From NCBI GenBank assembly GCA_964057225.1, contig OZ059897.1, forward strand, positions 14,322,001 through 14,386,000: a stretch of DNA of 64,000 nt, in the 5' to 3' direction. The position numbers and the translations under genes were made by a program. This document shows, in pieces, positions 1-46,691 of this stretch. Position 1 is the first letter of the stretch. Each line of letters starts with the position of its first letter. The stretch is from Auanema rhodensis (Eukaryota > Animalia > Nematoda). The notes beneath the pieces are model-generated. The model worked only from the letters and a program-made list of their open reading frames with translations, did no database searches and was not told the DNA's origin.

Positions 1-1818
1 TTGGGAAATTTACTGTTTATAACAGCAACAAGTGCAGCATATATATTTGAAAATACAGGCGAAAATGCTTGAGCTTGCATGATCGATCGGACAATTAACC
101 CCCTATTAAATGCTTATATCAAAAATTAAACATAAACATTACTTACTGTCCACGGAAAACATTTTCCTGTAATAGTTCTCGGACAACAGGTACCAAGTTT
201 GAAGTGTTGACCTAAATATACATTGTAATCTATTTACAAAAAACCCAAAATACTTTATTAATCAAACCATGAATTTTTTTCTTTAATCTTTCCCAGTTCA
301 TTCTCTGATACTCTTCGCCTCCCTTTAATTAATAATGTTATTATTTTTTAGGATTAAAACTTAACCTTATCAGCTATTTTCTCTTGCATCATCTTTAATT
401 TTGCCGGAGGAATATAAGCACCACCTGCTCTTGTTCGCAAATCCATTACAGGCTCTTTCTTAGGAACAGCTTCTATAAAAATGTTGAATAAGAAAGTTCA
501 GCATAACACCAATATGTTTTTTAAAGGAAAAAGATCATACCTTCCTTGACTTCATTTACTTTTTCAATCGTCTCACTTCGCTCATCGTATTTATCGTGCT
601 TGTCTTTTTTTTCACGTCTTTCATTTCTGGGACTTCGGTCATGACGATCTTTTCTGTCGTGTCGATCTCTTCGGTCGTCACGAGGACTTCTATCACGTCG
701 GTCTCTGCGGTCATCCCGAGGACTTCTATCACGTCGGTCTCTTCGGTCATCCCGAGGGCTTCTATCACGTCGGTCTCTTCGGTCATCCCTTGGACTTCTA
801 TCACTTCGGTCCCTACGGTCATCCCTTGGACTTCTATCACGTCGGTCTCTTCGGTCATCCCTTGGACTTCTATCACGTCGGTCTCTTCGGTCATCCCTTG
901 GACTTCTATCACGTCGGTCTCTTCGGTCATCCCTTGGACTTCTGTCACGTCGCTCCTTTCGATCATCATGAGGACTCCTGTCATGACGATCTCTTTTTTT
1001 ACGAGGGCTACCATCGTGATCATCGTTCAGATCTTCCCGAGGACTTCTGTCATTTTGGTCCTTTTCACCGTCCTGAAGACTTTTATCGACACGGTCCCTT
1101 CGTTCTTCTTGGGGACTGTTGCTTCTATCTCGAGGACTTTTGTCTCTGGAACTTTTTTCCTTGTTGGGACTGTCGTCTCTGGGACTTCTTTCCTTGTTGG
1201 GACTGTCGTCTCTGGGACTTCTTTCCTTGCTGGGACTTTCGTCTCTGGGACTTCTTTCCTTGCTAGGACTTTTGTCTCTAGACCTCCTTTCCTTGCTGGA
1301 ACTTCTGTCTCTTGAACTTCTATCCTTTCTGGGACTTTTGTCACTGGAGCTCCTTTCTTTTCTAGGACTTTTGTCTGCGGAGCTTCTATCCTTTCGAGGA
1401 CTTTTGTCTGCGGAGCTTCTATCCTTGCGCGGACTTCTGTCACTGGAGCTTCTATCCCTTCTGGGACTTCGGTCCTTAGGACTCAAATCGCGTCGGCCAC
1501 TTCGCTCGTTTCTATCAGCTCTTTCATGTCTTTCTTCCCGATCAGACTTTTCTCTTTTTTCACTCTTTGCTGACTTTCTTCTTGGAGATCTGCTGCTTTT
1601 CCCTAAATACTATAATATACACATATCGGTAAACTAAAAACTTACTTTCTTTATGCCTTCTTTCGCGGTCTCGTGAACGTGATCGAGATCTAGATCTTTT
1701 GCCTAAAAATATTTTTTTTAAATATAGGATCATTTAATAGAATATTTTAAACATTTAAATAAAAAAATCTCATACTTCTTTTAGATTTTCTTGGAGATCG
1801 TGATTTACTTCGAGACAT
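1..1818 (-). CDS. let-858: Pre-mRNA splicing factor CWC22/nucampholin, 5' part (multi-exon; runs off the left end)
   Basis: ATG at 1818 ([11 protein letters not shown]) follows a TTTTAAG acceptor. A long RS/RD-rich N-terminus (ORF 521-1486) is followed by the CWC22 hallmark [17 protein letters not shown] and MIF4G-start exons [14 protein letters not shown] / [17 protein letters not shown] / [33 protein letters not shown]. Confidence 0.93.
649..950. repeat. Coding 36-nt tandem repeat, ~8 copies, encoding [12 protein letters not shown]
   Basis: Unit GACTTCTATCACGTCGGTCTCTTCGGTCATCCCTTG (+ strand) starts at 685, 721, 757, 793, 829, 865 and 901 with few substitutions. Confidence 0.95.
1135..1480. 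repeat. Coding 33-nt degenerate tandem repeat encoding [11 protein letters not shown] / [11 protein letters not shown]
   Basis: 11-residue periodicity in ORF 521-1486; unit GGGACTGTCGTCTCTGGGACTTCTTTCCTTGTT. Confidence 0.85.
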
Positions 1819-4054: not shown

Positions 4055-6723
4055 TCAATGATATTTGAATTTATGAACAAGATATTTAGATTTTTTAGTA
4101 AAATGTGTACCTAACATAGATACTAAAGATAAAAACATTAACATGAAGCATAATACACAATTACTTGGAACATCAGATGGATCATAACTATCAGAATAGA
4201 GTTCATCCATATATGAAGCACTTTGATTCCACCTGAAAATAATTTTATTTTCAATACAAAATAAATAAATAAACCCTACCGGCAAAATTGAGATGCTGCT
4301 ATAGAGTCAATATCATTACGTTCAGTTCGAGAACAATGAATTATTGGTAATCGACTAATAATATTTGAAATAAAAAAATAATTTGAATATCGATATGGTG
4401 AGAGATATGTAAAATAATTGAACCAAGTAGGTGACATGGTTACAAAAGATCTGAATAATATTTTAAAAAATAAATAATTTTAAATTATAAATTACCGTAA
4501 ATGTCCACCAGCACCAATTAATAAAAAAGTGTCAATAGTTATTACAAATCCTATAGCTGTTAAATTATTTTTAATTAAAATCATTGCAATCATAGTAATA
4601 TATTGAAAAAAGAAACATATAAATAAAATTAATATAAAAGATTGAAATATAAGCCATTCATCAGATATATTACACATCCTAAAGTTAAATGTTATTCGTA
4701 ATATTATTAATTTAACTTATTTACCAAAATATAATAAATGTTGATATTGCAATCTCAATTATATATATTGGAGTAAATATTAATAAATGAGATATAGCTG
4801 AAATCATCTGGCTATAAAGCCGTTCAGAGGATTCAAAATATGATAAATCACGAATATCTCGATCTGAAAAAAATACTTAATTAATTGCTTTCAAGTTACA
4901 TTACTGCTTACAATTTATATTTGTCAAAAATATTATAACTATGGATAATATAAAAACAGAAATTTCTAAAAAACCAATAGAAGAATGCGGAACCGTCCAT
5001 GATCCAGCTAACATGTTCACACTGTTCATACTATTGGTACATAATGAGTATAAGAATTTAAAAACCTGAATAAGGACAGAAATACTGCTGCTAAAGGAAA
5101 CACGGATATAAGAAGAAGAAACCGTACTAAATCCGTTATTAATCTATGCAAACTTCGACTGAAAATACATTTTCCATTTAATTAAAACTTTTAAGTTTTT
5201 TACCGGCATAATATAAATAATTTAAGAATTGTTGTTGGTTGTGTCAGATAACATAAAGCTGATGGTGAAGAAAAGGTAATTGCTGAATCTGTATTATCAG
5301 GACGAATTGTATTTGATCTATATTCCTGTAAAATAATTATTAAGGAATATTGATTACTTTATTGATACTTTAAGATAATTGACCAACAACATAGCCTGTT
5401 CCTGAGTTTCATCACAACGTGTAGCTGTTTCTCTATCAATAGTAGCTATGGTAACTGAACAAAGTTGTTTTTCAGAACAATTGTTTTCCCTTACTGTAAT
5501 AAGCAGCTGGGTTTTCATTACTTGGACATGGAAATCCCGCCTTCTTGAAGTATGCCGGCAAATTTTTAGTATAACCTAAATGAGTATTTTAATAAATATT
5601 TAATTAAAAATCAAATATATACCACTATAAAATACTTCACCATAAAATAATATAGTAATTGTGGTTATTAATTGATATATGTCTGATCTTGGGCTTTGAA
5701 TACTTATAAAAATAATTCTATTATGTAGTCGAGCATAACTTTGTAAACAGTTCATAAGTTGAAAAGCTGATAATGCTTCAATATCTTTACAAGGATCATC
5801 AAGTATGAGTAGAACTAGAATTATTCAATTAGTAACTTTAATCAAACTATTCGAATGCAAAAACCTGGATCTTTTGCTGCAGCTAGAGCAATAAGAACTC
5901 TTCTTCTTGCACTTTCAGATAATTTGAAAAGTTTCGTGTATGCATAAGAAGATATTTCAAATTCTCTCATTAATTGAACTGTCTAAATAATTTAAAATAT
6001 AAGTATATATTAAATAATTTTATTATTATTATTATTATTTAAAAAATTGTAATTTTAAAAATAAAGTTCGATATACCCGTTGTTCTATATCTGATTCCGT
6101 TAGTGATCCCCCAAGGCATAGCTTTAAATTATAATATAACAGATTTCGAACTGTTAATTTTGAAGGATAGTTTGAATAGAAATTGACAAATGATCCAATT
6201 TGGCAAAATCGAGATTCTGAAAAGAAAAAGTAATTAATAGAAAGATGGCTTATATTATGACGATGAATACATTATATCTGTAACAACTGTCATGAATATT
6301 ATTAAATCGTTCTTATTCATAACCATTTCTATTTTAGAAAATAGAAATATGATAAACTATACTTGTTAAAAGAGTTTGATTTAAGTACACGGAACCAGAA
6401 GTATCACCATCGGCACTGTTAGCTACTACCTTCAGAAGGGTTGATTTGCCGCTTCCTTGAAAAATCAGACGATATCAATGCTTATCCACATGTTTTACCT
6501 GATACACCACAAACTGCATGTATTTCTCCAGATTTCGCTTCCAAATTGACATCATTCAAGAATTGAGCAATAACAGGAGGGCTGTAAATACGTGAGAACC
6601 TGAAAAAACATTATTGAAATGAATATATAGTATTGTAAAAAACCATTTATCTCCGGCAACTGTACTCATGAAAGAAATGTTTCTACATTCTAAAATATTT
6701 TTATTTTCTTCTAAACCTTCCAT
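4055..6723 (-). CDS. abch-1: ABCG-type half transporter (NBD-TMD), ABCG5-like; probable abch-1 orthologue
   Basis: MEGLEENKNILECRNISF...FLNDVNLEAKSGEIHAVCGVSGSGKSTLL (Walker A spans an intron)...LSESARRRVLIALAAAKDPVLLILDDP...NRIIFISIQSPRSDIYQL...YFKKAGFPCPSNENPAAYY, then hydrophobic TM exons; stop at 4055. The symbol is from recall and less certain than the family. Confidence 0.8.
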
Positions 6724-6923
6724 ATAGGTAAATTTGAATAAAAAATTCTAAAATAAAATATTTAAAAAGAAGAAATTTATTACAAAAAATGAAATTAATA
6801 TTTTGTTCAAGAAATGGAGAGTAATAAGAGAAGAAATACTATATTTAGCCTTCAGATACTGAGTAGTCGGTTAATTATCTTCAGGAAGTCAATAAGTCTT
6901 CATTATTTGAAAATAACCTCAGA

Positions 6924-6984
6924 CTACCTTGAAGGTAAAGAATATTGACCAGATGGAGAGGGTTGACTGTATGACCTTTGCCAT
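6924..6984. promoter_or_regulatory. Candidate nuclear-receptor sites in the bidirectional spacer (DR1/HNF4-type and NR5A-like)
   Basis: TGACCTTTGCCAT at 6972-6984 (ATGGCA-A-AGGTCA on -); TCAAGGTAG on - at 6924-6932; GATA site TTATCT at 6875-6880. Confidence 0.35.
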
Positions 6985-7119
6985 GAGACTTTTACAGTAA
7001 ATGAAAAACAATTTTTACAGTTGCTATAGATGAATGATGGTTTTCTTATATTATTTTATTTAAAATTTGTCTATATTTTAATATTTTAGTTAAATTACCA
7101 TAGCTCAAGACTTTATACA

Positions 7120-10100
7120 ATGTTATCTCCAATAAATCAAGAATACAAGCATGGATTAAGAAGAAATTATTTAGAAAATAATGATATATATGCAAATGAT
7201 TTTATAATGGAAGGAAATGTAAGTTATTTCTTCAATTTTTCAAACAATTTGTATAACTTTCGCAAATTTTTTGTTTTATACATACAAAAGGCTTTGAGAG
7301 AAAAGGAAATACATGAATATAACATGCTATGACTGAAGAACGATAAAGGTAAGAAGGTGAAGAAGTCAGAGGAGTAGAGAGGATGAGGGTAGTTAAGACA
7401 TGAACTGGATATAATTGTGAAAGCGAATCCAACAAATTGTGCTGGACTGTGATCCGGTTTTCCGATTCTTTTGAATAGTGTGTAGTAGGGTAATTCGTTG
7501 TTCTGTTGGAACTTCTTGACTTTGAATCACCTCTCGTTTTATTTGACTCTTCAATCTCAGTTTACCTTATTTTGGCAAAAAGCTTCTCATTTTTGTGTCT
7601 TAGTTTCGTTCTTGTTCATTTTATGTTGGTATTATGTTATTCAAGAGATAATACTATGATTTTTGCAAATATTTTTATTTTTATGTTATTTCACCAATGT
7701 ATTTTCGATTTTTCTTTCCAGAAGAACTCATGCTCTGGTGCAAGTAGTATGAATTCCAAAAAGTTGTCTGTTCTTGAATGTTCAGAAGATTACTTACCGT
7801 GTGGATATCCACGTAATGCAGGTTTGATTGAAACAGTTCAAGCTTATATTTCATTTGTAATACTTTGATTAGGTTCGTCATCACAGCAGGACAGATTAAC
7901 AGAACCAGAATTAGTATCAAAATGGAAGAAGAAAAATACAAATCCATTTGATATGAAGTTAGTTAATAATATCTTTCATATCAATTTTCATGTCTATTTT
8001 TATAAATTTTGAAGCTCTCCCGCTAGAGGCGAATTGAGTGTTTTCACTGAAGAAACTGATACAGTTTTTGCTGATGATGAAAGGTTAGTAGAGTATAAAA
8101 GATGAAAAAGACTATTCAATTCATATAAAATACAAATTCAATGTGTCAGAAGATTATATATTCCAGAAACTCAGGATTTCTAGTTCCTTTACGACATCAA
8201 GGTCATTACTTTTCGAACCTAGATTTCTTTACAAGTAGTGGATATAATTATCTGAAATATGCAAAATATTCAGAATTATCTAAATCAAATAGAACGTACG
8301 ATTTTTCATATTTCAACTATAAAATAAATAAAAAGTAAATCATTTAGTAATTCTCCACATTTATCAATATCTCATCTATCGTTTTCAATGGATACTCGAA
8401 CTCGTATAGATCGTTGGTTATGGCGTGTTCCAAAAATAATTCATTCACTGAATAATATTAGTATGGAATTAGTTTCTGGAGATATTATGGCACTTCTTTA
8501 CACAACAGGTTTCTAAGTTTTTCTTCTTTTTGAAATTTTGTTCTAAGCTTGCAATCTTTTAAGAAGCCAGTGAAGTTTTTTTTAGAACAAGAAGTAAAAA
8601 CATTGTTGAGAATCATTGCCGGTGATACTATACCAAATGGAAAAATAAGTGGTGAATTCATGATAAATGGCCATAGAATTAAATCACATAACTTAAAAGG
8701 AAGAATTGGTAAATAGGTTTACAATTAAAGTTTTTAATTTGATATAGCTTTCATAAGAGAAGATGATCTTCCGGAATATTTAACAGTATATCAATATCTT
8801 CAATTATATACATCTTATTATGGAACAGAAGCTGCAAATAACTGCAAATCATTCAATATGGTTAATATTGAAATGAAATTTAGAATTAATCGATATTGAT
8901 ATATAGATTGATCAACTTGTTGTAACTCTGGCACTAACTCATTTCAAGAATGTTTTATGTAGCGAATTAACTAAATCAGAAAAACGTAGAGTTCAAATTG
9001 CTTGTCAAATTCTATGTGATACAGGTAAATATTATTTTGGAAATATAATTAAATACATATTTTAGATATTCTTGTTTGTGATAATATAACTGGTGATATG
9101 GATGTGTATGATTCTGCTTTTGTAATTGATTTCCTACGAGATTGGGCTTTGAAGCTTAATAGAATTGTTATCATGTCAATTGCTCCATGTTCTATGGGTG
9201 TATTAGAAATGTTTTCACAAGGTTTAAACCTAATTAATCAATTCAAACATTATTTTGAATATTTACAGTGTCAATATTAGCTTCAGGACAATTAATATAC
9301 TTTGGTACACCATCTAATTTCATTCCATATTTTGAATCAATTAACTTTCCTTGTCCACCATTCAAAAATCCTTGTGATTATTATGGTTAATTTTAATTAT
9401 ATAAAATATATTAAAACATATATTTCAGTTGATTTAGCCACACATGACCACTTAACAGTAGAAGCATCAAAAGATTCATCTCAACGAATAGATATATTAT
9501 GTTCAAAATGGAAACAACATGGAATGACTCATGTGCCTGTAACTATATCAACATTACCGAATAAATTAGAAAATGTTGATATTGTGACGTCATCAATAAT
9601 TCTTTACAAGTTAGTTTATATTCTCTTTATATTCTTTTTTAATTTTAATTTTCAGACGATATTGTAAAGAAATGTTTAATAAGCCTTTACTTCATTTACA
9701 GCCATGTATTTGTACTCTTTTCATTTCACTTATCATTGGATTTATATTTTTTCAATTATCAAATCAAAAACGATCGGAAATAGATGATCGTTTGGGATTA
9801 ATTACAACTATAATGTATTTTATTTTATTTCCATTATGTATTTTATGGATAAAACAAGGTAACTCTTTATATAATTTTTAGTTAAAATCTTTCACTTAGC
9901 CCATATTTTTCGAAAGAAAGCAAGAATTGATGCAAGAAGTGGTTTTTACTCTTCTATTACTTATTCTATAGTTACGGTACGTATTTGAATATTTTTGTTT
10001 TTACAATTTTAAAACTTTTTTTCAGATATCATTCCTTTTACCATTATTTATAACTCAAATATTGTTTTTTGTCACACCATTGTATCTATTATCAGGTAAA

Positions 10101-10915
10101 TTTACCTTTGATGAGAGTATCTGAACAATTTTTCATTAAATGAGCAAAAAAACTTAAAAAATGGTAAATAAATAGAAATAATTTCAGGAATAACTATGTT
10201 AAATGGAACTGACTACTCATTCATCTCATTTTTTCTAATCATCTTTTTATATTTTGGACTTGTTTATTCCATTTGTTTCTTTCTCAGTCATTTCTTGAAA
10301 TCGCCAATCGCTTCACTTGTTATAACATGTAAGTAACTGATTGTCTATTTGAGGTCTCACTAATGAATATCATTTCAGATCTGTTTATATCCATTTTTCA
10401 TCTTTCAAGTGGTCTTTCTGTTGTATCTGCAGATTTTCCTGCTAGTCTGACTGCTTTTCGCTTATTTTCTCCTGGTTATTGGACATCATATTTCTTACTT
10501 CATCAAGCATTTCTCGGTAATTCTATTAACTATTTACATAGAAATATAATAATATTATAGGATCATCAGTTGTTAGTTCTTTAATACAAAATACAGCTGC
10601 TGTTAATTTCACAGAAATTGTATTTTCTTGTGAACGTAAAAAGATTTTAGCTAAACGAATAGATGAAGTATAAAATTATTTTAAATATTTTTAACATTCA
10701 TATACTATCAGGTGCCAATATATACGATCTCAACATGCTCAAAATTCCGATCGGATCATTTAATGGCATTTTACGGTTTTGAAGGCAGATTTTTATATGA
10801 AAATTATTCAGCTACCCACTTTGTGTCATTTGGAATCATTGTAATCATCATATGGATTGCAATTTTTTCCATTTTTTTCTGTTGTTCCAACCGAAAAAAA
10901 AGTAAAATCAAATGA
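7120..10915 (+). CDS. abcx-1: Degenerate ABCG-type half transporter with long N-terminal extension, ABCG8-like; probable abcx-1 orthologue
   Basis: Exons give PHLSISHLSF...LNNISMELVSGDIMALLYTTEQEVKTLLRIIAG...SGEFMING...ELTKSEKRRVQIACQILCDTDILVCDNITGDMDVYDSAFVIDFLRDWA...NRIVIMSI...FPCPPFKNPCDYYVDLAT...DDRLGL, then TM exons; stop at 10915. The start is uncertain (possible extra exon from ~6953). Confidence 0.78.

Positions 10916-39698: not shown

Positions 39699-46691
<6,993 letters not shown>

What the first reader, a model, noticed from the sequence alone, without database searches (positions are those of the whole stretch)
4055..10915. Head-to-head ABCG5/ABCG8-like half-transporter pair in a sterol-auxotrophic nematode
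Seen: two NBD-TMD half-transporters are divergently transcribed, with provisional ATGs ~400 bp apart (6723 and 7120). Both carry the FPCP..(E/K)NP..YY segment after the NBD. The left gene has an intact Walker A and the right gene a destroyed one. Established: vertebrate ABCG5 and ABCG8 are a head-to-head, obligate heterodimeric sterol exporter with the same Walker A asymmetry, and arthropods keep a similar pair. Nematodes cannot synthesise sterols de novo. Inference: these genes, probably the poorly characterised abch-1/abcx-1 type, are overlooked G5/G8 orthologues forming a co-regulated sterol or lipid handling heterodimer.
Basis: partly seen in the sequence, partly recalled or inferred. Interest (0 to 1): 0.8.

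Follow-up and report, generated by a model that had tools for sequence, protein, structure and literature searches.

The report
Nematode ABCG5/ABCG8 head-to-head gene pair
Two neighbouring, divergently transcribed genes in this nematode are the worm counterparts of the animal sterol-exporter pair ABCG5/ABCG8, which published surveys said nematodes lack, and both have lost most of the residues normally needed to burn ATP.

Summary
Two intron-rich NBD-TMD half-transporter genes lie head to head: LEFT (4055-6723, minus strand, 15 exons, 628 aa) and RIGHT (7749-10915, plus strand, 18 exons, 759 aa). Both are transcribed and spliced in four RNA runs. One correction: RIGHT starts at ATG 7749, not 7120, so the two ATGs are 1,026 bp apart, not about 400.

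- LEFT belongs to the nematode abch-1 family, which includes CBR-ABCH-1. That family is sister to panarthropod ABCG5 (support 100/99).
- RIGHT belongs to a nematode family that groups with the ABCG8-type neighbour of a mite ABCG5 (100/100). A tree built from TMD columns alone gives the same clades.
- A nematode-specific duplication is rejected (AU p = 2e-74).
- A LEFT-family TMD profile hits human ABCG5 best. A RIGHT-type TMD hits only human ABCG8.
- The head-to-head arrangement recurs in Halicephalobus, Steinernema and two Caenorhabditis species, and more loosely in Pristionchus.
- The Walker A asymmetry has the mammalian polarity.

The site that is active in mammals is also non-canonical here: Walker B is DD, the H-loop His is absent, and the partner signature is LTKSE. 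ATP hydrolysis, heterodimerisation and sterol transport are inferred, not shown.

No ABCH, white or vertebrate sequences could be fetched for the tree, and only one ABCG8 was available. Another first-stage note in this scan flagged the same stretch for "dead" ATP sites.

The parts
4055..6723 (-). LEFT gene CDS: ABCG5-type half-transporter (abch-1 family), 15 exons, 628 aa. Exons: 6723-6644, 6599-6499, 6455-6363, 6216-6077, 5982-5865, 5814-5623, 5575-5495, 5454-5369, 5325-5204, 5158-5066, 5021-4912, 4863-4725, 4678-4496, 4450-4280, 4232-4055.
   Evidence: The first 10 introns are confirmed by spliced RNA contigs with CT..AC ends. The last 4 are inferred from GT-AG sites and an open frame. The full-length best match is P. 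mayeri P0009 (E = 2e-142).
7722..10915 (+). RIGHT gene: ABCG8-type half-transporter, 18 coding exons, 759 aa, ATG at 7749. Exons: 7749-7821, 7873-7957, 8015-8083, 8167-8295, 8348-8508, 8586-8708, 8748-8860, 8907-9024, 9066-9221, 9269-9385, 9429-9609, 9656-9858, 9900-9970, 10026-10116, 10188-10328, 10379-10516, 10561-10667, 10712-10915. The first exon begins at the acceptor 7720-7721.
   Evidence: RNA joints confirm introns 7822-7872, 9222-9268, 9386-9428, 10329-10378 and 10517-10560. A loose contig end confirms 9610-9655. Contig pieces cover 8165-8295, 8378-8506, 8584-8707 and 10025-10152. The other junctions come from an open-frame GT-AG search. Several N-terminal and TMD junctions have close alternatives.
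6724..7748 (.). Divergent intergenic region, presumed to hold a shared or bidirectional promoter. RNA depth falls to zero between about 6916 and 7515.
   Evidence: Depth table. No enrichment of GATA or nuclear-receptor half-sites here or in four orthologous intergenic regions.
6439..6508 (-). LEFT Walker A, G-V-S-G-S-G-K-S-T. It is intact and split by intron 6456-6498.
   Evidence: Translation. GSGK[ST] is conserved in most LEFT-family rows; Haemonchus has DSGRN and the Diploscapter model lacks the region.
5908..5922 (-). LEFT signature motif, LSESA instead of SGGE/Q.
5792..5812 (-). LEFT Walker B, LLILDDP. The catalytic Glu is replaced by Asp.
   Evidence: DD occurs in most nematodes; DE is kept only in Ascaris and Toxocara.
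5684..5704 (-). LEFT H-loop, SIQSPRS (His replaced by Gln).
   Evidence: alignment to human ABCG5 (TIHQPRS).
8496..8602 (+). RIGHT Walker A remnant, LYTT-E-QEVKT. It has no P-loop glycines and is split by intron 8509-8585.
   Evidence: It is destroyed in all five RIGHT-family sequences and in the mite ABCG8-type protein.
8967..8981 (+). RIGHT signature motif, LTKSE instead of SGGE.
   Evidence: The mite ABCG8-type protein has LTEAE.
9068..9085 (+). RIGHT Walker B remnant, ILVCDN (no catalytic Glu).
9176..9193 (+). RIGHT H-loop remnant, SIAPCS (no His).
9343..9384 (+). RIGHT NFPCPPFKNPCDYY segment, followed by VDLATHD. It closely matches the mite ABCG8-type YPCPAFKNPSDYY-LDLVTLD.
   Evidence: motif table.
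5496..5537 (-). LEFT GFPCPSNENPAAYY segment. It matches the ABCG5-type GFPCPELENPLMYY.
   Evidence: motif table.

Best explanation
The two genes are the nematode orthologues of the bilaterian ABCG5/ABCG8 pair. LEFT is the ABCG5-type gene and belongs to the family named abch-1 in Caenorhabditis. RIGHT is the ABCG8-type gene and is probably the abcx-1 family. They keep the ancestral head-to-head arrangement around an intergenic region of about 1 kb, and both are expressed.

By analogy with the vertebrate proteins, they most likely assemble into an obligate heterodimer of two NBD-TMD half-transporters in a membrane and handle sterols or related lipids. This step is inferred, not shown.

The nucleotide sites are asymmetric in the mammalian sense. 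The ABCG8-type partner has no Walker A, and the ABCG5-type partner has an intact one. The site that is catalytic in mammals is also non-canonical here: Walker B is Asp-Asp, the H-loop has Gln instead of His, the Q-loop Gln is absent, and the partner's signature is LTKSE. I therefore expect ATP binding at one site with slow or no hydrolysis. The pair would then be a low-turnover, ATP-gated lipid handler rather than a fast pump.
For: Gene structure and expression: spliced RNA contigs from 4 runs cover both genes, and complete ORFs were built.

LEFT and ABCG5:
- An exhaustive search of 1.84 billion representatives with LEFT exon 6 found nematode proteins first, among them CBR-ABCH-1 and proteins that automatic annotation names ABCG5 in Ascaris and Haemonchus. 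The same family also holds such proteins from Toxocara and Aphelenchoides.
- After the nematodes, and apart from full-size two-domain ABCG proteins, the named animal half-transporters were all ABCG5: tardigrades, arachnids, copepods and a springtail.
- In the ML tree the LEFT family and panarthropod ABCG5 group at 100/99.
- The LEFT-family TMD profile hits human ABCG5 at 50 bits (E = 2e-12) and ABCG8 at 28 bits. No other PDB chain matches.

RIGHT and ABCG8:
- The RIGHT family and the mite ABCG8-type gene group at 100/100 in the full tree and 100/99 in the TMD-only tree.
- The Halicephalobus RIGHT TMD hits only human ABCG8 (E = 3e-6). The mite gene's TMD behaves the same way.
- Scores are reciprocal. 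The mite G8 scores 201 bits against the RIGHT orthologue and 89 against the LEFT orthologue. A G5 scores 168 bits (128 + 40) against LEFT and 103 against RIGHT.

Not a local duplication: the AU test gives p = 2e-74.

Synteny: a RIGHT-type gene lies upstream on the opposite strand of the LEFT orthologue in Halicephalobus, S. carpocapsae, C. auriculariae and C. briggsae, 0.4-2.5 kb away. In P. mayeri it lies 8.8 kb away.

Motifs.
Against: - Only one ABCG8 sequence (mite, my own gene model) was available for the tree. It and the RIGHT family are both long branches with degenerate NBDs, so some long-branch attraction is possible. The TMD-only tree and the human ABCG8 PDB hits argue against it.
- RIGHT-type NBDs score higher against human ABCG5 than ABCG8 (79 vs 64 bits).
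- No ABCH, white, ABCG2/4 or vertebrate G5/G8 sequences were in the tree.
- Published surveys found no C. elegans G5/G8 orthologue (PMC3724490) and place nematode genes in subfamily H (PMC4587908).
- Heterodimerisation, membrane location, substrate and ATPase activity are untested.
- The intergenic region has no recognisable sterol-receptor or GATA site enrichment.
- Co-expression rests on four low-depth runs from one study.
Confidence: 0.75

Rival explanations
1. The pair functions as a non-transporting pseudo-transporter or sensor. The genes are G5/G8 orthologues, but with both composite ATP sites crippled they no longer pump. Instead they act as an ATP- or sterol-binding regulator or scaffold.
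For: - LEFT has Walker B DD, H-loop Gln, no Q-loop Gln and signature LSESA.
- RIGHT has no Walker A, no catalytic Glu, no H-loop His and signature LTKSE.
- The same losses run through both nematode families.
- Pfam ABC_tran is not detected on most RIGHT-type gene products.
- Another first-stage note raised the same idea.
Against: - LEFT keeps a perfect P-loop in most nematodes examined, which suggests selection for nucleotide binding.
- The TMDs are retained and conserved enough to hit human G5 and G8 specifically.
- Arthropod ABCG5 orthologues show similar H-loop, signature and Q-loop losses yet are conserved as a pair.
- Asp at the catalytic position can support slow hydrolysis in other ABC proteins (general knowledge, not tested here).
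Confidence: 0.3
2. The grouping of RIGHT with ABCG8 is a long-branch artefact. RIGHT would then be an old nematode-specific, fast-evolving ABCG paralogue (an orphan 'abcx') that merely sits beside the ABCG5-type gene.
For: - The RIGHT stem (0.89) and the mite G8 branch (1.2) are long, and win_RIGHT has deviant composition.
- Only one G8 was sampled.
- RIGHT NBDs score better against human G5 than G8.
Against: - The TMD-only tree still gives 100/99.
- The RIGHT-type TMD hits human ABCG8 and nothing else in the PDB.
- RIGHT shares derived motifs with the mite G8: CPxFKNPxDYY-xDLxT and L-T/S-x-x-E-K/R.
- The head-to-head position is exactly that of ABCG8 in vertebrates and arthropods (PMC3724490).
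Confidence: 0.1
3. The pair arose by a nematode-specific tandem inverted duplication of a single ABCG gene, followed by decay of one copy.
For: The genes are adjacent, share the same domain order, and share the FPCP..NP..YY segment.
Against: - LEFT and RIGHT never group together.
- Forcing them into one clade costs 102 lnL units (AU p = 2e-74).
- Each has its own non-nematode relatives.
Confidence: 0.03
4. LEFT is a true ABCH-subfamily member, as its Caenorhabditis name abch-1 implies, and is unrelated to ABCG5.
For: Literature usage: subfamily H is 'found in arthropods and nematodes' (PMC4587908), and the gene is named abch-1.
Against: - Every named animal half-transporter among the best exhaustive-search hits is ABCG5, none ABCH.
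- LEFT groups with ABCG5 at 100/99.
- The LEFT-family TMD profile hits human ABCG5 specifically.
- Dermauw et al. list 0 ABCH genes for C. elegans (PMC3724490, Table 2).
Confidence: 0.04

Closest known systems
Vertebrate ABCG5/ABCG8 (sterolin-1/-2) obligate heterodimer
   Same: - Reverse NBD-TMD half-transporters, head-to-head genes and a short shared intergenic region.
- The ABCG8-type partner has a degenerate Walker A, and the ABCG5-type partner an intact one.
- The ABCG5-type partner has a degenerate signature.
- The TMDs match human G5 and G8 specifically.
   Different: - The consensus site of the mammalian pair (G5 Walker A, Walker B and H-loop plus G8 signature) is not canonical here. 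It has Walker B DD, H-loop Gln, no Q-loop Gln and RIGHT signature LTKSE.
- RIGHT has an N-terminal extension of about 130 aa.
- Identity to the human proteins is low.
- Sterol export and dimerisation were not tested.
Arthropod ABCG5/ABCG8 orthologue pair (Drosophila CG11069/CG31121; Tetranychus tetur01g16290/16280; Halotydeus destructor pair in locus L008)
   Same: - Head-to-head pair (PMC3724490).
- These are the sister groups of LEFT and RIGHT in the tree.
- They share loss of the H-loop His, the SGG signature and the Q-loop Gln in the G5 type. The mite G8-type also lacks Walker A, the catalytic Glu and the H-loop His.
- The organisms are likewise sterol auxotrophs (general knowledge).
   Different: - Most arthropod ABCG5 keep Walker B DE but have Walker A GSGK[K/R]A. 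Nematode LEFT keeps GSGK[S/T] but has Walker B DD.
- The function of the arthropod pair is also unknown (PMC4587908).
Caenorhabditis abch-1 (C56E6.1) and abcx-1 (C56E6.5)
   Same: - CBR-ABCH-1 is a member of LEFT's family.
- A RIGHT-like NBD is encoded about 0.75 kb upstream of Cbr-abch-1 on the opposite strand.
   Different: - That the upstream gene is abcx-1 rests on my memory of the C. elegans cosmid names and was not checked.
- In C. briggsae only the NBD half of the RIGHT-type gene was detectable, and it is buried in a UTP20 gene model.
ABCH subfamily (arthropods, zebrafish)
   Same: The same reverse NBD-TMD half-transporter topology. The nematode gene carries the ABCH name.
   Different: No sequence or tree evidence here links LEFT to ABCH. 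All evidence points to ABCG5. ABCH sequences could not be fetched for a direct test.

Membership tests
ABCG5/ABCG8 orthologous pair | Reverse half-transporter architecture (one NBD followed by one six-helix TMD) in both genes | tested here: met
   The gene models give an NBD followed by a TMD in both. The RIGHT TM1 exon hits Pfam ABC2_membrane at E = 3.4e-5 and the LEFT Walker A exon hits ABC_tran weakly. PDB ABCG hits.
ABCG5/ABCG8 orthologous pair | One gene falls in the ABCG5 clade | tested here: met
   The LEFT family is sister to panarthropod ABCG5 at 100/99, and at 100/96 with TMD columns only. The LEFT-family TMD profile scores human ABCG5 at 50 bits and ABCG8 at 28 bits, with nothing else.
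ABCG5/ABCG8 orthologous pair | The other gene falls in the ABCG8 clade | tested here: met
   The RIGHT family groups with the mite ABCG8-type gene at 100/100, and at 100/99 with TMD columns only. The RIGHT-type TMD hits only human ABCG8. Caveat: one ABCG8 sequence, long branches, and the NBD scores G5 above G8.
ABCG5/ABCG8 orthologous pair | Head-to-head (divergent) gene arrangement with a short intergenic region, conserved across species | tested here: met
   In the window the ATGs are 1,026 bp apart. The same arrangement is seen in Halicephalobus, S. carpocapsae, C. auriculariae and C. briggsae. It is looser in P. mayeri, at 8.8 kb.
ABCG5/ABCG8 orthologous pair | NBD asymmetry: degenerate Walker A in the G8 partner, intact Walker A in the G5 partner, degenerate signature in the G5 partner | tested here: met
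   The motif table shows this for the window proteins and most of their nematode relatives (exceptions: Haemonchus DSGRN; the Diploscapter model lacks the region).
ABCG5/ABCG8 orthologous pair | One canonical, hydrolysis-competent composite site (G5 Walker A, Walker B Glu and H-loop His plus G8 SGG signature) | tested here: not met
   LEFT has Walker B LDDP, H-loop SIQSPRS and no Q-loop Gln. RIGHT has signature LTKSE. This lowers the claim that it works exactly like mammalian G5G8. It does not affect orthology.
ABCG5/ABCG8 orthologous pair | Obligate heterodimerisation and sterol efflux | not testable with these tools
   No multimer modelling or experiment was available. The spliced proteins could not be handed to the structure tool.
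ABCH subfamily | Phylogenetic grouping with Drosophila CG9990, CG33970 and CG11147 and zebrafish abch1, outside ABCG | not tested
   No ABCH sequence could be retrieved. Indirectly, none of the 30 named top representatives is ABCH, and the animal half-transporters among them are all ABCG5.

The most novel reading that the evidence does not exclude
The whole ecdysozoan ABCG5/ABCG8 pair (nematodes, arthropods, tardigrades, all sterol auxotrophs) may have given up canonical ATP hydrolysis.
- Every ABCG5-type sequence examined from these phyla lacks the H-loop His, the Q-loop Gln and the SGG signature.
- The ABCG8-type sequences lack Walker A, the catalytic Glu and the H-loop His.
- Nematodes go furthest, with Walker B Asp-Asp.

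The pair would then be an ATP-binding but essentially non-hydrolysing sterol gate or sensor, repurposed in animals that must retain dietary sterol rather than excrete it. C. elegans abch-1/abcx-1 would be the tractable model for it.
Probability: 0.3. Interest if true: 0.7.

Novelty: new member of a known kind. Interest (0 to 1): 0.58.

Why it matters
Comparative surveys state that C. elegans has no ABCG5/8 orthologue (PMC3724490) and file the nematode gene under subfamily H (PMC4587908). Automatic annotation names only the LEFT-type protein "ABCG5", in a few parasites, and leaves the RIGHT-type gene unnamed, split or fused into neighbouring models.

Recognising abch-1 and its divergent neighbour as the G5/G8 pair has three consequences. 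It corrects the nomenclature. It shows that the head-to-head unit predates the split of Ecdysozoa from other bilaterians and survives in nematodes. It also gives sterol biology in a sterol-auxotrophic genetic model, and in parasitic nematodes, a concrete and testable candidate transporter.

The loss of catalytic residues at both ATP sites poses a mechanistic question about how, or whether, such a pair transports.

Tried and rejected
1. Fetching ABCG8, ABCH, white or vertebrate sequences.
- P0009 returned only 13 hits, 11 of them nematode, partly because I set the E-value cut-off too strict.
- The P0067 list was filled by 120 arthropod and tardigrade ABCG5.
- A profile that mixed a LEFT scaffold with RIGHT and mite-G8 NBD exons returned LEFT-family, plant, fungal and bacterial ABC proteins, but no G8 or RIGHT family.

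2. Finding more ABCG8 genes beside ABCG5.
- Sarcoptes: the contig ends upstream.
- Hypsibius, Pediculus and Capitella: no ABC gene within 10 kb upstream.
- Two RefSeq isoforms were not on record.
- Only the Halotydeus neighbour was usable.

3. Scaffolded alignments of short exons. MAFFT misplaced the TMD exons, so alignments A1, A2 and A4 were discarded.

4. Single exons against Pfam and the ESM Atlas gave only generic ABC2_membrane hints.

5. The RIGHT Walker B exon alone gave no PDB hit.

6. A splice-exact model of the Halicephalobus RIGHT gene failed. An approximate concatenation of open segments was used instead.

7. A scan of five orthologous intergenic regions for GATA (TGATAA) and nuclear-receptor half-sites showed no enrichment.

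8. A literature search for a Strongyloides ABCG inventory returned nothing relevant.

9. The spliced window proteins were never submitted to tools that need a reference or id. Structure prediction and whole-protein database searches of the window's own proteins were therefore left out.


Full report
**What is there**

The stretch is AT-rich (about 28% G+C) and eukaryotic, with very short introns. Assembled RNA contigs from four public runs of one study were laid on 4916-10915. They show both strands transcribed and spliced. Ten introns with CT..AC ends lie between 5022 and 6643, in the minus-strand gene. GT..AG introns lie in the plus-strand gene.

From these joints and an open-frame GT-AG search I built two complete models.
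- LEFT: minus strand, 15 exons, ATG 6723, stop 4055, 628 aa.
- RIGHT: plus strand, 18 coding exons, ATG 7749, stop 10915, 759 aa.

The first 10 LEFT introns and 6 RIGHT introns are RNA-confirmed. The rest are inferred, and a few have near-equivalent alternatives in the N-terminal and TMD parts of RIGHT.

RNA depth is zero from 6916 to 7515 in all runs. The first expressed exon begins at a TTTCCAG acceptor at 7720-7721. The two ATGs are therefore 1,026 bp apart. No other ABCG-like gene lies in the window.

**Motifs**

| Motif | LEFT | RIGHT |
|---|---|---|
| Walker A | GVSGSGKST (canonical) | LYTTEQEVKT (destroyed) |
| Signature | LSESA | LTKSE |
| Walker B | LLILDDP | ILVCDN |
| H-loop | SIQSPRS | SIAPCS |
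| Q-loop Gln | absent | absent |

Both proteins carry the FPCP..NP..YY segment. A separate first-stage note in this scan said that both composite sites look non-canonical, and that is also correct.

**Relatives of LEFT**

LEFT exon 6 (Walker B to H-loop, 63 aa) was searched exhaustively against 1.84 billion cluster representatives. The best hits are nematode proteins. In full length these are 32-40% identical to LEFT.

The source names of these hits and of the further family members found include:
- CBR-ABCH-1 of C. briggsae;
- 'ABCG5' or 'ABCG5-like' in Ascaris suum, Haemonchus contortus, Toxocara canis and Aphelenchoides bicaudatus;
- unnamed proteins of Pristionchus, Steinernema, Halicephalobus, Panagrolaimus, Diploscapter, Acanthocheilonema and other Caenorhabditis species.

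After the nematodes, and apart from full-size two-domain ABCG proteins, every named animal half-transporter is ABCG5. These come from tardigrades, a pseudoscorpion, spiders, copepods and a springtail. No ABCH protein appeared among the 30 representatives I could name.

**Synteny**

I fetched the DNA around the LEFT orthologues.
- Halicephalobus: an ABC2_membrane gene lies on the opposite strand about 0.4 kb upstream.
- S. carpocapsae: two adjacent gene models on the opposite strand, about 0.9 kb away, together form a RIGHT-type gene.
- C. auriculariae: a 714-aa ABC2_membrane gene lies 2.5 kb upstream on the opposite strand.
- P. mayeri: a 731-aa ABC gene lies 8.8 kb upstream on the opposite strand, with three small genes between.

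tblastn with RIGHT confirms that each of these is RIGHT-like. It also finds a RIGHT-like NBD about 0.75 kb upstream of Cbr-abch-1 on the opposite strand, hidden inside a UTP20 gene model. The divergent pair is thus conserved in the clade IV and clade V nematodes sampled.

**An ABCG8 reference**

The database tools could not deliver ABCG8 sequences (see "Tried and rejected"). I therefore took the mite Halotydeus destructor. Its ABCG5 (P0213) has an 887-aa ABC gene head to head with it, and I modelled that gene from the locus.
- Its TMD exon hits only human ABCG8 in the PDB (41 bits).
- Its NBD exon scores human G5 and G8 equally.

Its motifs resemble RIGHT strikingly.

| Feature | Mite ABCG8-type | RIGHT |
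|---|---|---|
| Walker A | MATNALEGT | LYTTEQEVK |
| Signature | LTEAE | LTKSE |
| Walker B | LLLDQP | ILVCDN |
| FPCP segment | YPCPAFKNPSDYY-LDLVTLD | FPCPPFKNPCDYY-VDLATHD |

**Tests of orthology**

1. Reciprocal scores. The mite G8 scores 201 bits on the Halicephalobus RIGHT orthologue and 89 on its LEFT orthologue. A G5 scores 128 + 40 bits on LEFT and 103 on RIGHT.

2. ML tree. It used 39 sequences, 634 columns, the LG+C20+F+G4 model and a careful search.
- The 11 LEFT-family sequences form a clade (100/100) that is sister to 13 panarthropod ABCG5 (100/99). A Capitella G5-like protein lies outside (98/94).
- The 5 RIGHT-family sequences form a clade (100/99) joined to the mite G8 (100/100).
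- A fish ABCG1 (identified), plant ABCGs and fungal ABCGs lie outside.

3. AU test. It rejects the best tree with LEFT and RIGHT held as one clade (delta lnL 102, p = 2e-74).

4. TMD-only tree. Both RIGHT and G8 have degenerate NBDs and long branches, so I rebuilt the tree from TMD columns only (305 columns). The same two groupings appear, at 100/96 and 100/99.

5. Vertebrate anchors from the PDB.
- A profile of nine LEFT-family TMDs hits human ABCG5 over the whole TMD (50 bits, E = 2e-12), then ABCG8 (28 bits), and nothing else at E <= 1.
- The Halicephalobus RIGHT TMD hits only human ABCG8 (30 bits, E = 3e-6).
- The NBDs of both families score G5 and G8 far above ABCG1 and ABCG2. For LEFT the scores are 151 and 146 against 110 and 100. 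For RIGHT they are 79 and 64 against 44 and 43.
- The one discordant point is that the RIGHT NBD scores human G5 above G8.

**The organism**

Both genes nest inside nematode clades, nearest to the Caenorhabditis, Diploscapter and Haemonchus sequences. The window therefore comes from a rhabditid nematode. I did not identify the species.

**How it probably works**

*Shown:* two expressed, intact, conserved half-transporter genes that are orthologous to ABCG5 and ABCG8 and share a divergent intergenic region.

*Inferred from the vertebrate system (established knowledge):* they form an obligate heterodimer and handle sterols or related lipids.

The nucleotide-site pattern keeps the mammalian polarity. 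In mammals the degenerate site is built from G8 Walker A and the G5 signature, and the competent site from G5 Walker A and the G8 signature. Here the 'competent' site lacks the catalytic Glu (Asp instead), the H-loop His, the Q-loop Gln and the SGG of the partner signature.

Across nematodes the P-loop of the G5 type is conserved in most species examined (Haemonchus has DSGRN), while Walker B is DD in most species. DE is kept in Ascaris and Toxocara. I therefore expect ATP binding with slow or no hydrolysis.

The arthropod and tardigrade ABCG5 sequences already lack the H-loop His, the Q-loop Gln and the SGG signature, and they have Walker A GSGK[K/R]A. Much of this degeneration is therefore ecdysozoan rather than nematode-specific.

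Co-regulation is only weakly supported. Both genes are present at similar low depth in the same four runs. No GATA or nuclear-receptor motif enrichment marks the intergenic region.

**Comparison with the literature**

- Dermauw et al. 2013 (PMC3724490) state that C. elegans orthologues of human ABCG5/8 could not be identified, and they list 0 ABCH genes for C. elegans.
- The salmon-louse survey (PMC4587908) says subfamily H occurs in arthropods and nematodes, and that the functions of the arthropod G5/G8 orthologues are unknown.
- abch-1 appears in the searched library only as an expression marker in H. contortus (PMC11636055). abcx-1 appears only in an RNAi longevity list (PMC3468884).
- I found no paper that assigns the nematode pair to G5/G8.
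- Automatic annotation already calls several LEFT-type proteins 'ABCG5'. The RIGHT-type gene is unnamed and often mis-modelled: split in S. carpocapsae, fused to a 1,959-aa product in Halicephalobus, and absorbed into UTP20 in C. briggsae.

**Verdict**

The interpretation as overlooked G5/G8 orthologues in a conserved head-to-head pair is well supported for LEFT. It is supported for RIGHT with the caveat of thin ABCG8 sampling. Function as a sterol-handling heterodimer is a reasonable inference.

The loss of canonical catalytic residues at both sites is the unexpected element. This is a new member of a known kind, with a possibly altered mechanism, and of moderate interest.

Noticed in passing
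window 633-967 and 1134-1469: Two tandem-repeat arrays with periods of 36 and 33 nt (8.5 and 10 copies, 92% and 84% matches). They lie in an unusually G+C-rich (48-49%), strongly AT-skewed block. The periods are multiples of three, so this may be a repetitive coding exon of a neighbouring gene.
   Followed up: no
window 45235-45306 (-): A tRNA gene. It is the only Rfam match at gathering threshold in the window.
   Followed up: no
window 7701 (RNA run X2): One RNA contig matches the window from 7701 onward, 21 nt upstream of the RIGHT first-exon acceptor. It carries 255 further upstream letters that occur nowhere in the 64-kb window. It could be a distant 5' exon, a chimeric contig or read-through from elsewhere. 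It is too long to be a spliced leader.
   Followed up: partly
L008 (Halotydeus destructor), plus the P0067-P0290 set: Arthropod and tardigrade ABCG5 orthologues themselves lack the H-loop His (E/D/S/Q instead), the Q-loop Gln and the SGG signature, and have Walker A GSGK[K/R]A. The mite ABCG8-type partner lacks Walker A, the catalytic Glu (LDQP) and the H-loop His. Non-canonical ATP sites may be general to ecdysozoan G5/G8.
   Followed up: partly
L002 1419-9643, L003 5605-9090, L004 1-9381: The RIGHT-type gene is mis-modelled in public annotations. In Halicephalobus it is fused with a Cys_rich_FGFR gene into a 1,959-aa product. In S. carpocapsae it is split into 366-aa and 382-aa products. In C. 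briggsae it is absorbed into a UTP20 model. In most species its NBD escapes Pfam ABC_tran. This probably explains why the family went unrecognised.
   Followed up: partly
L007, L009, L010: In Hypsibius exemplaris, Pediculus humanus and Capitella teleta no ABC gene lies within 10 kb upstream of the ABCG5-type gene. The head-to-head pair is therefore not universal, or the spacing is larger there.
   Followed up: partly
L003 8647-9138 (-): The N-terminal extension of the mite ABCG8-type protein (aa 32-104) gives weak tblastn matches upstream of the S. carpocapsae RIGHT-type NBD. RIGHT and its Halicephalobus orthologue share a GHYFSN.D.F...NYLKYAK motif before the NBD. This may be a conserved N-terminal element of ABCG8-type proteins.
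   Followed up: no
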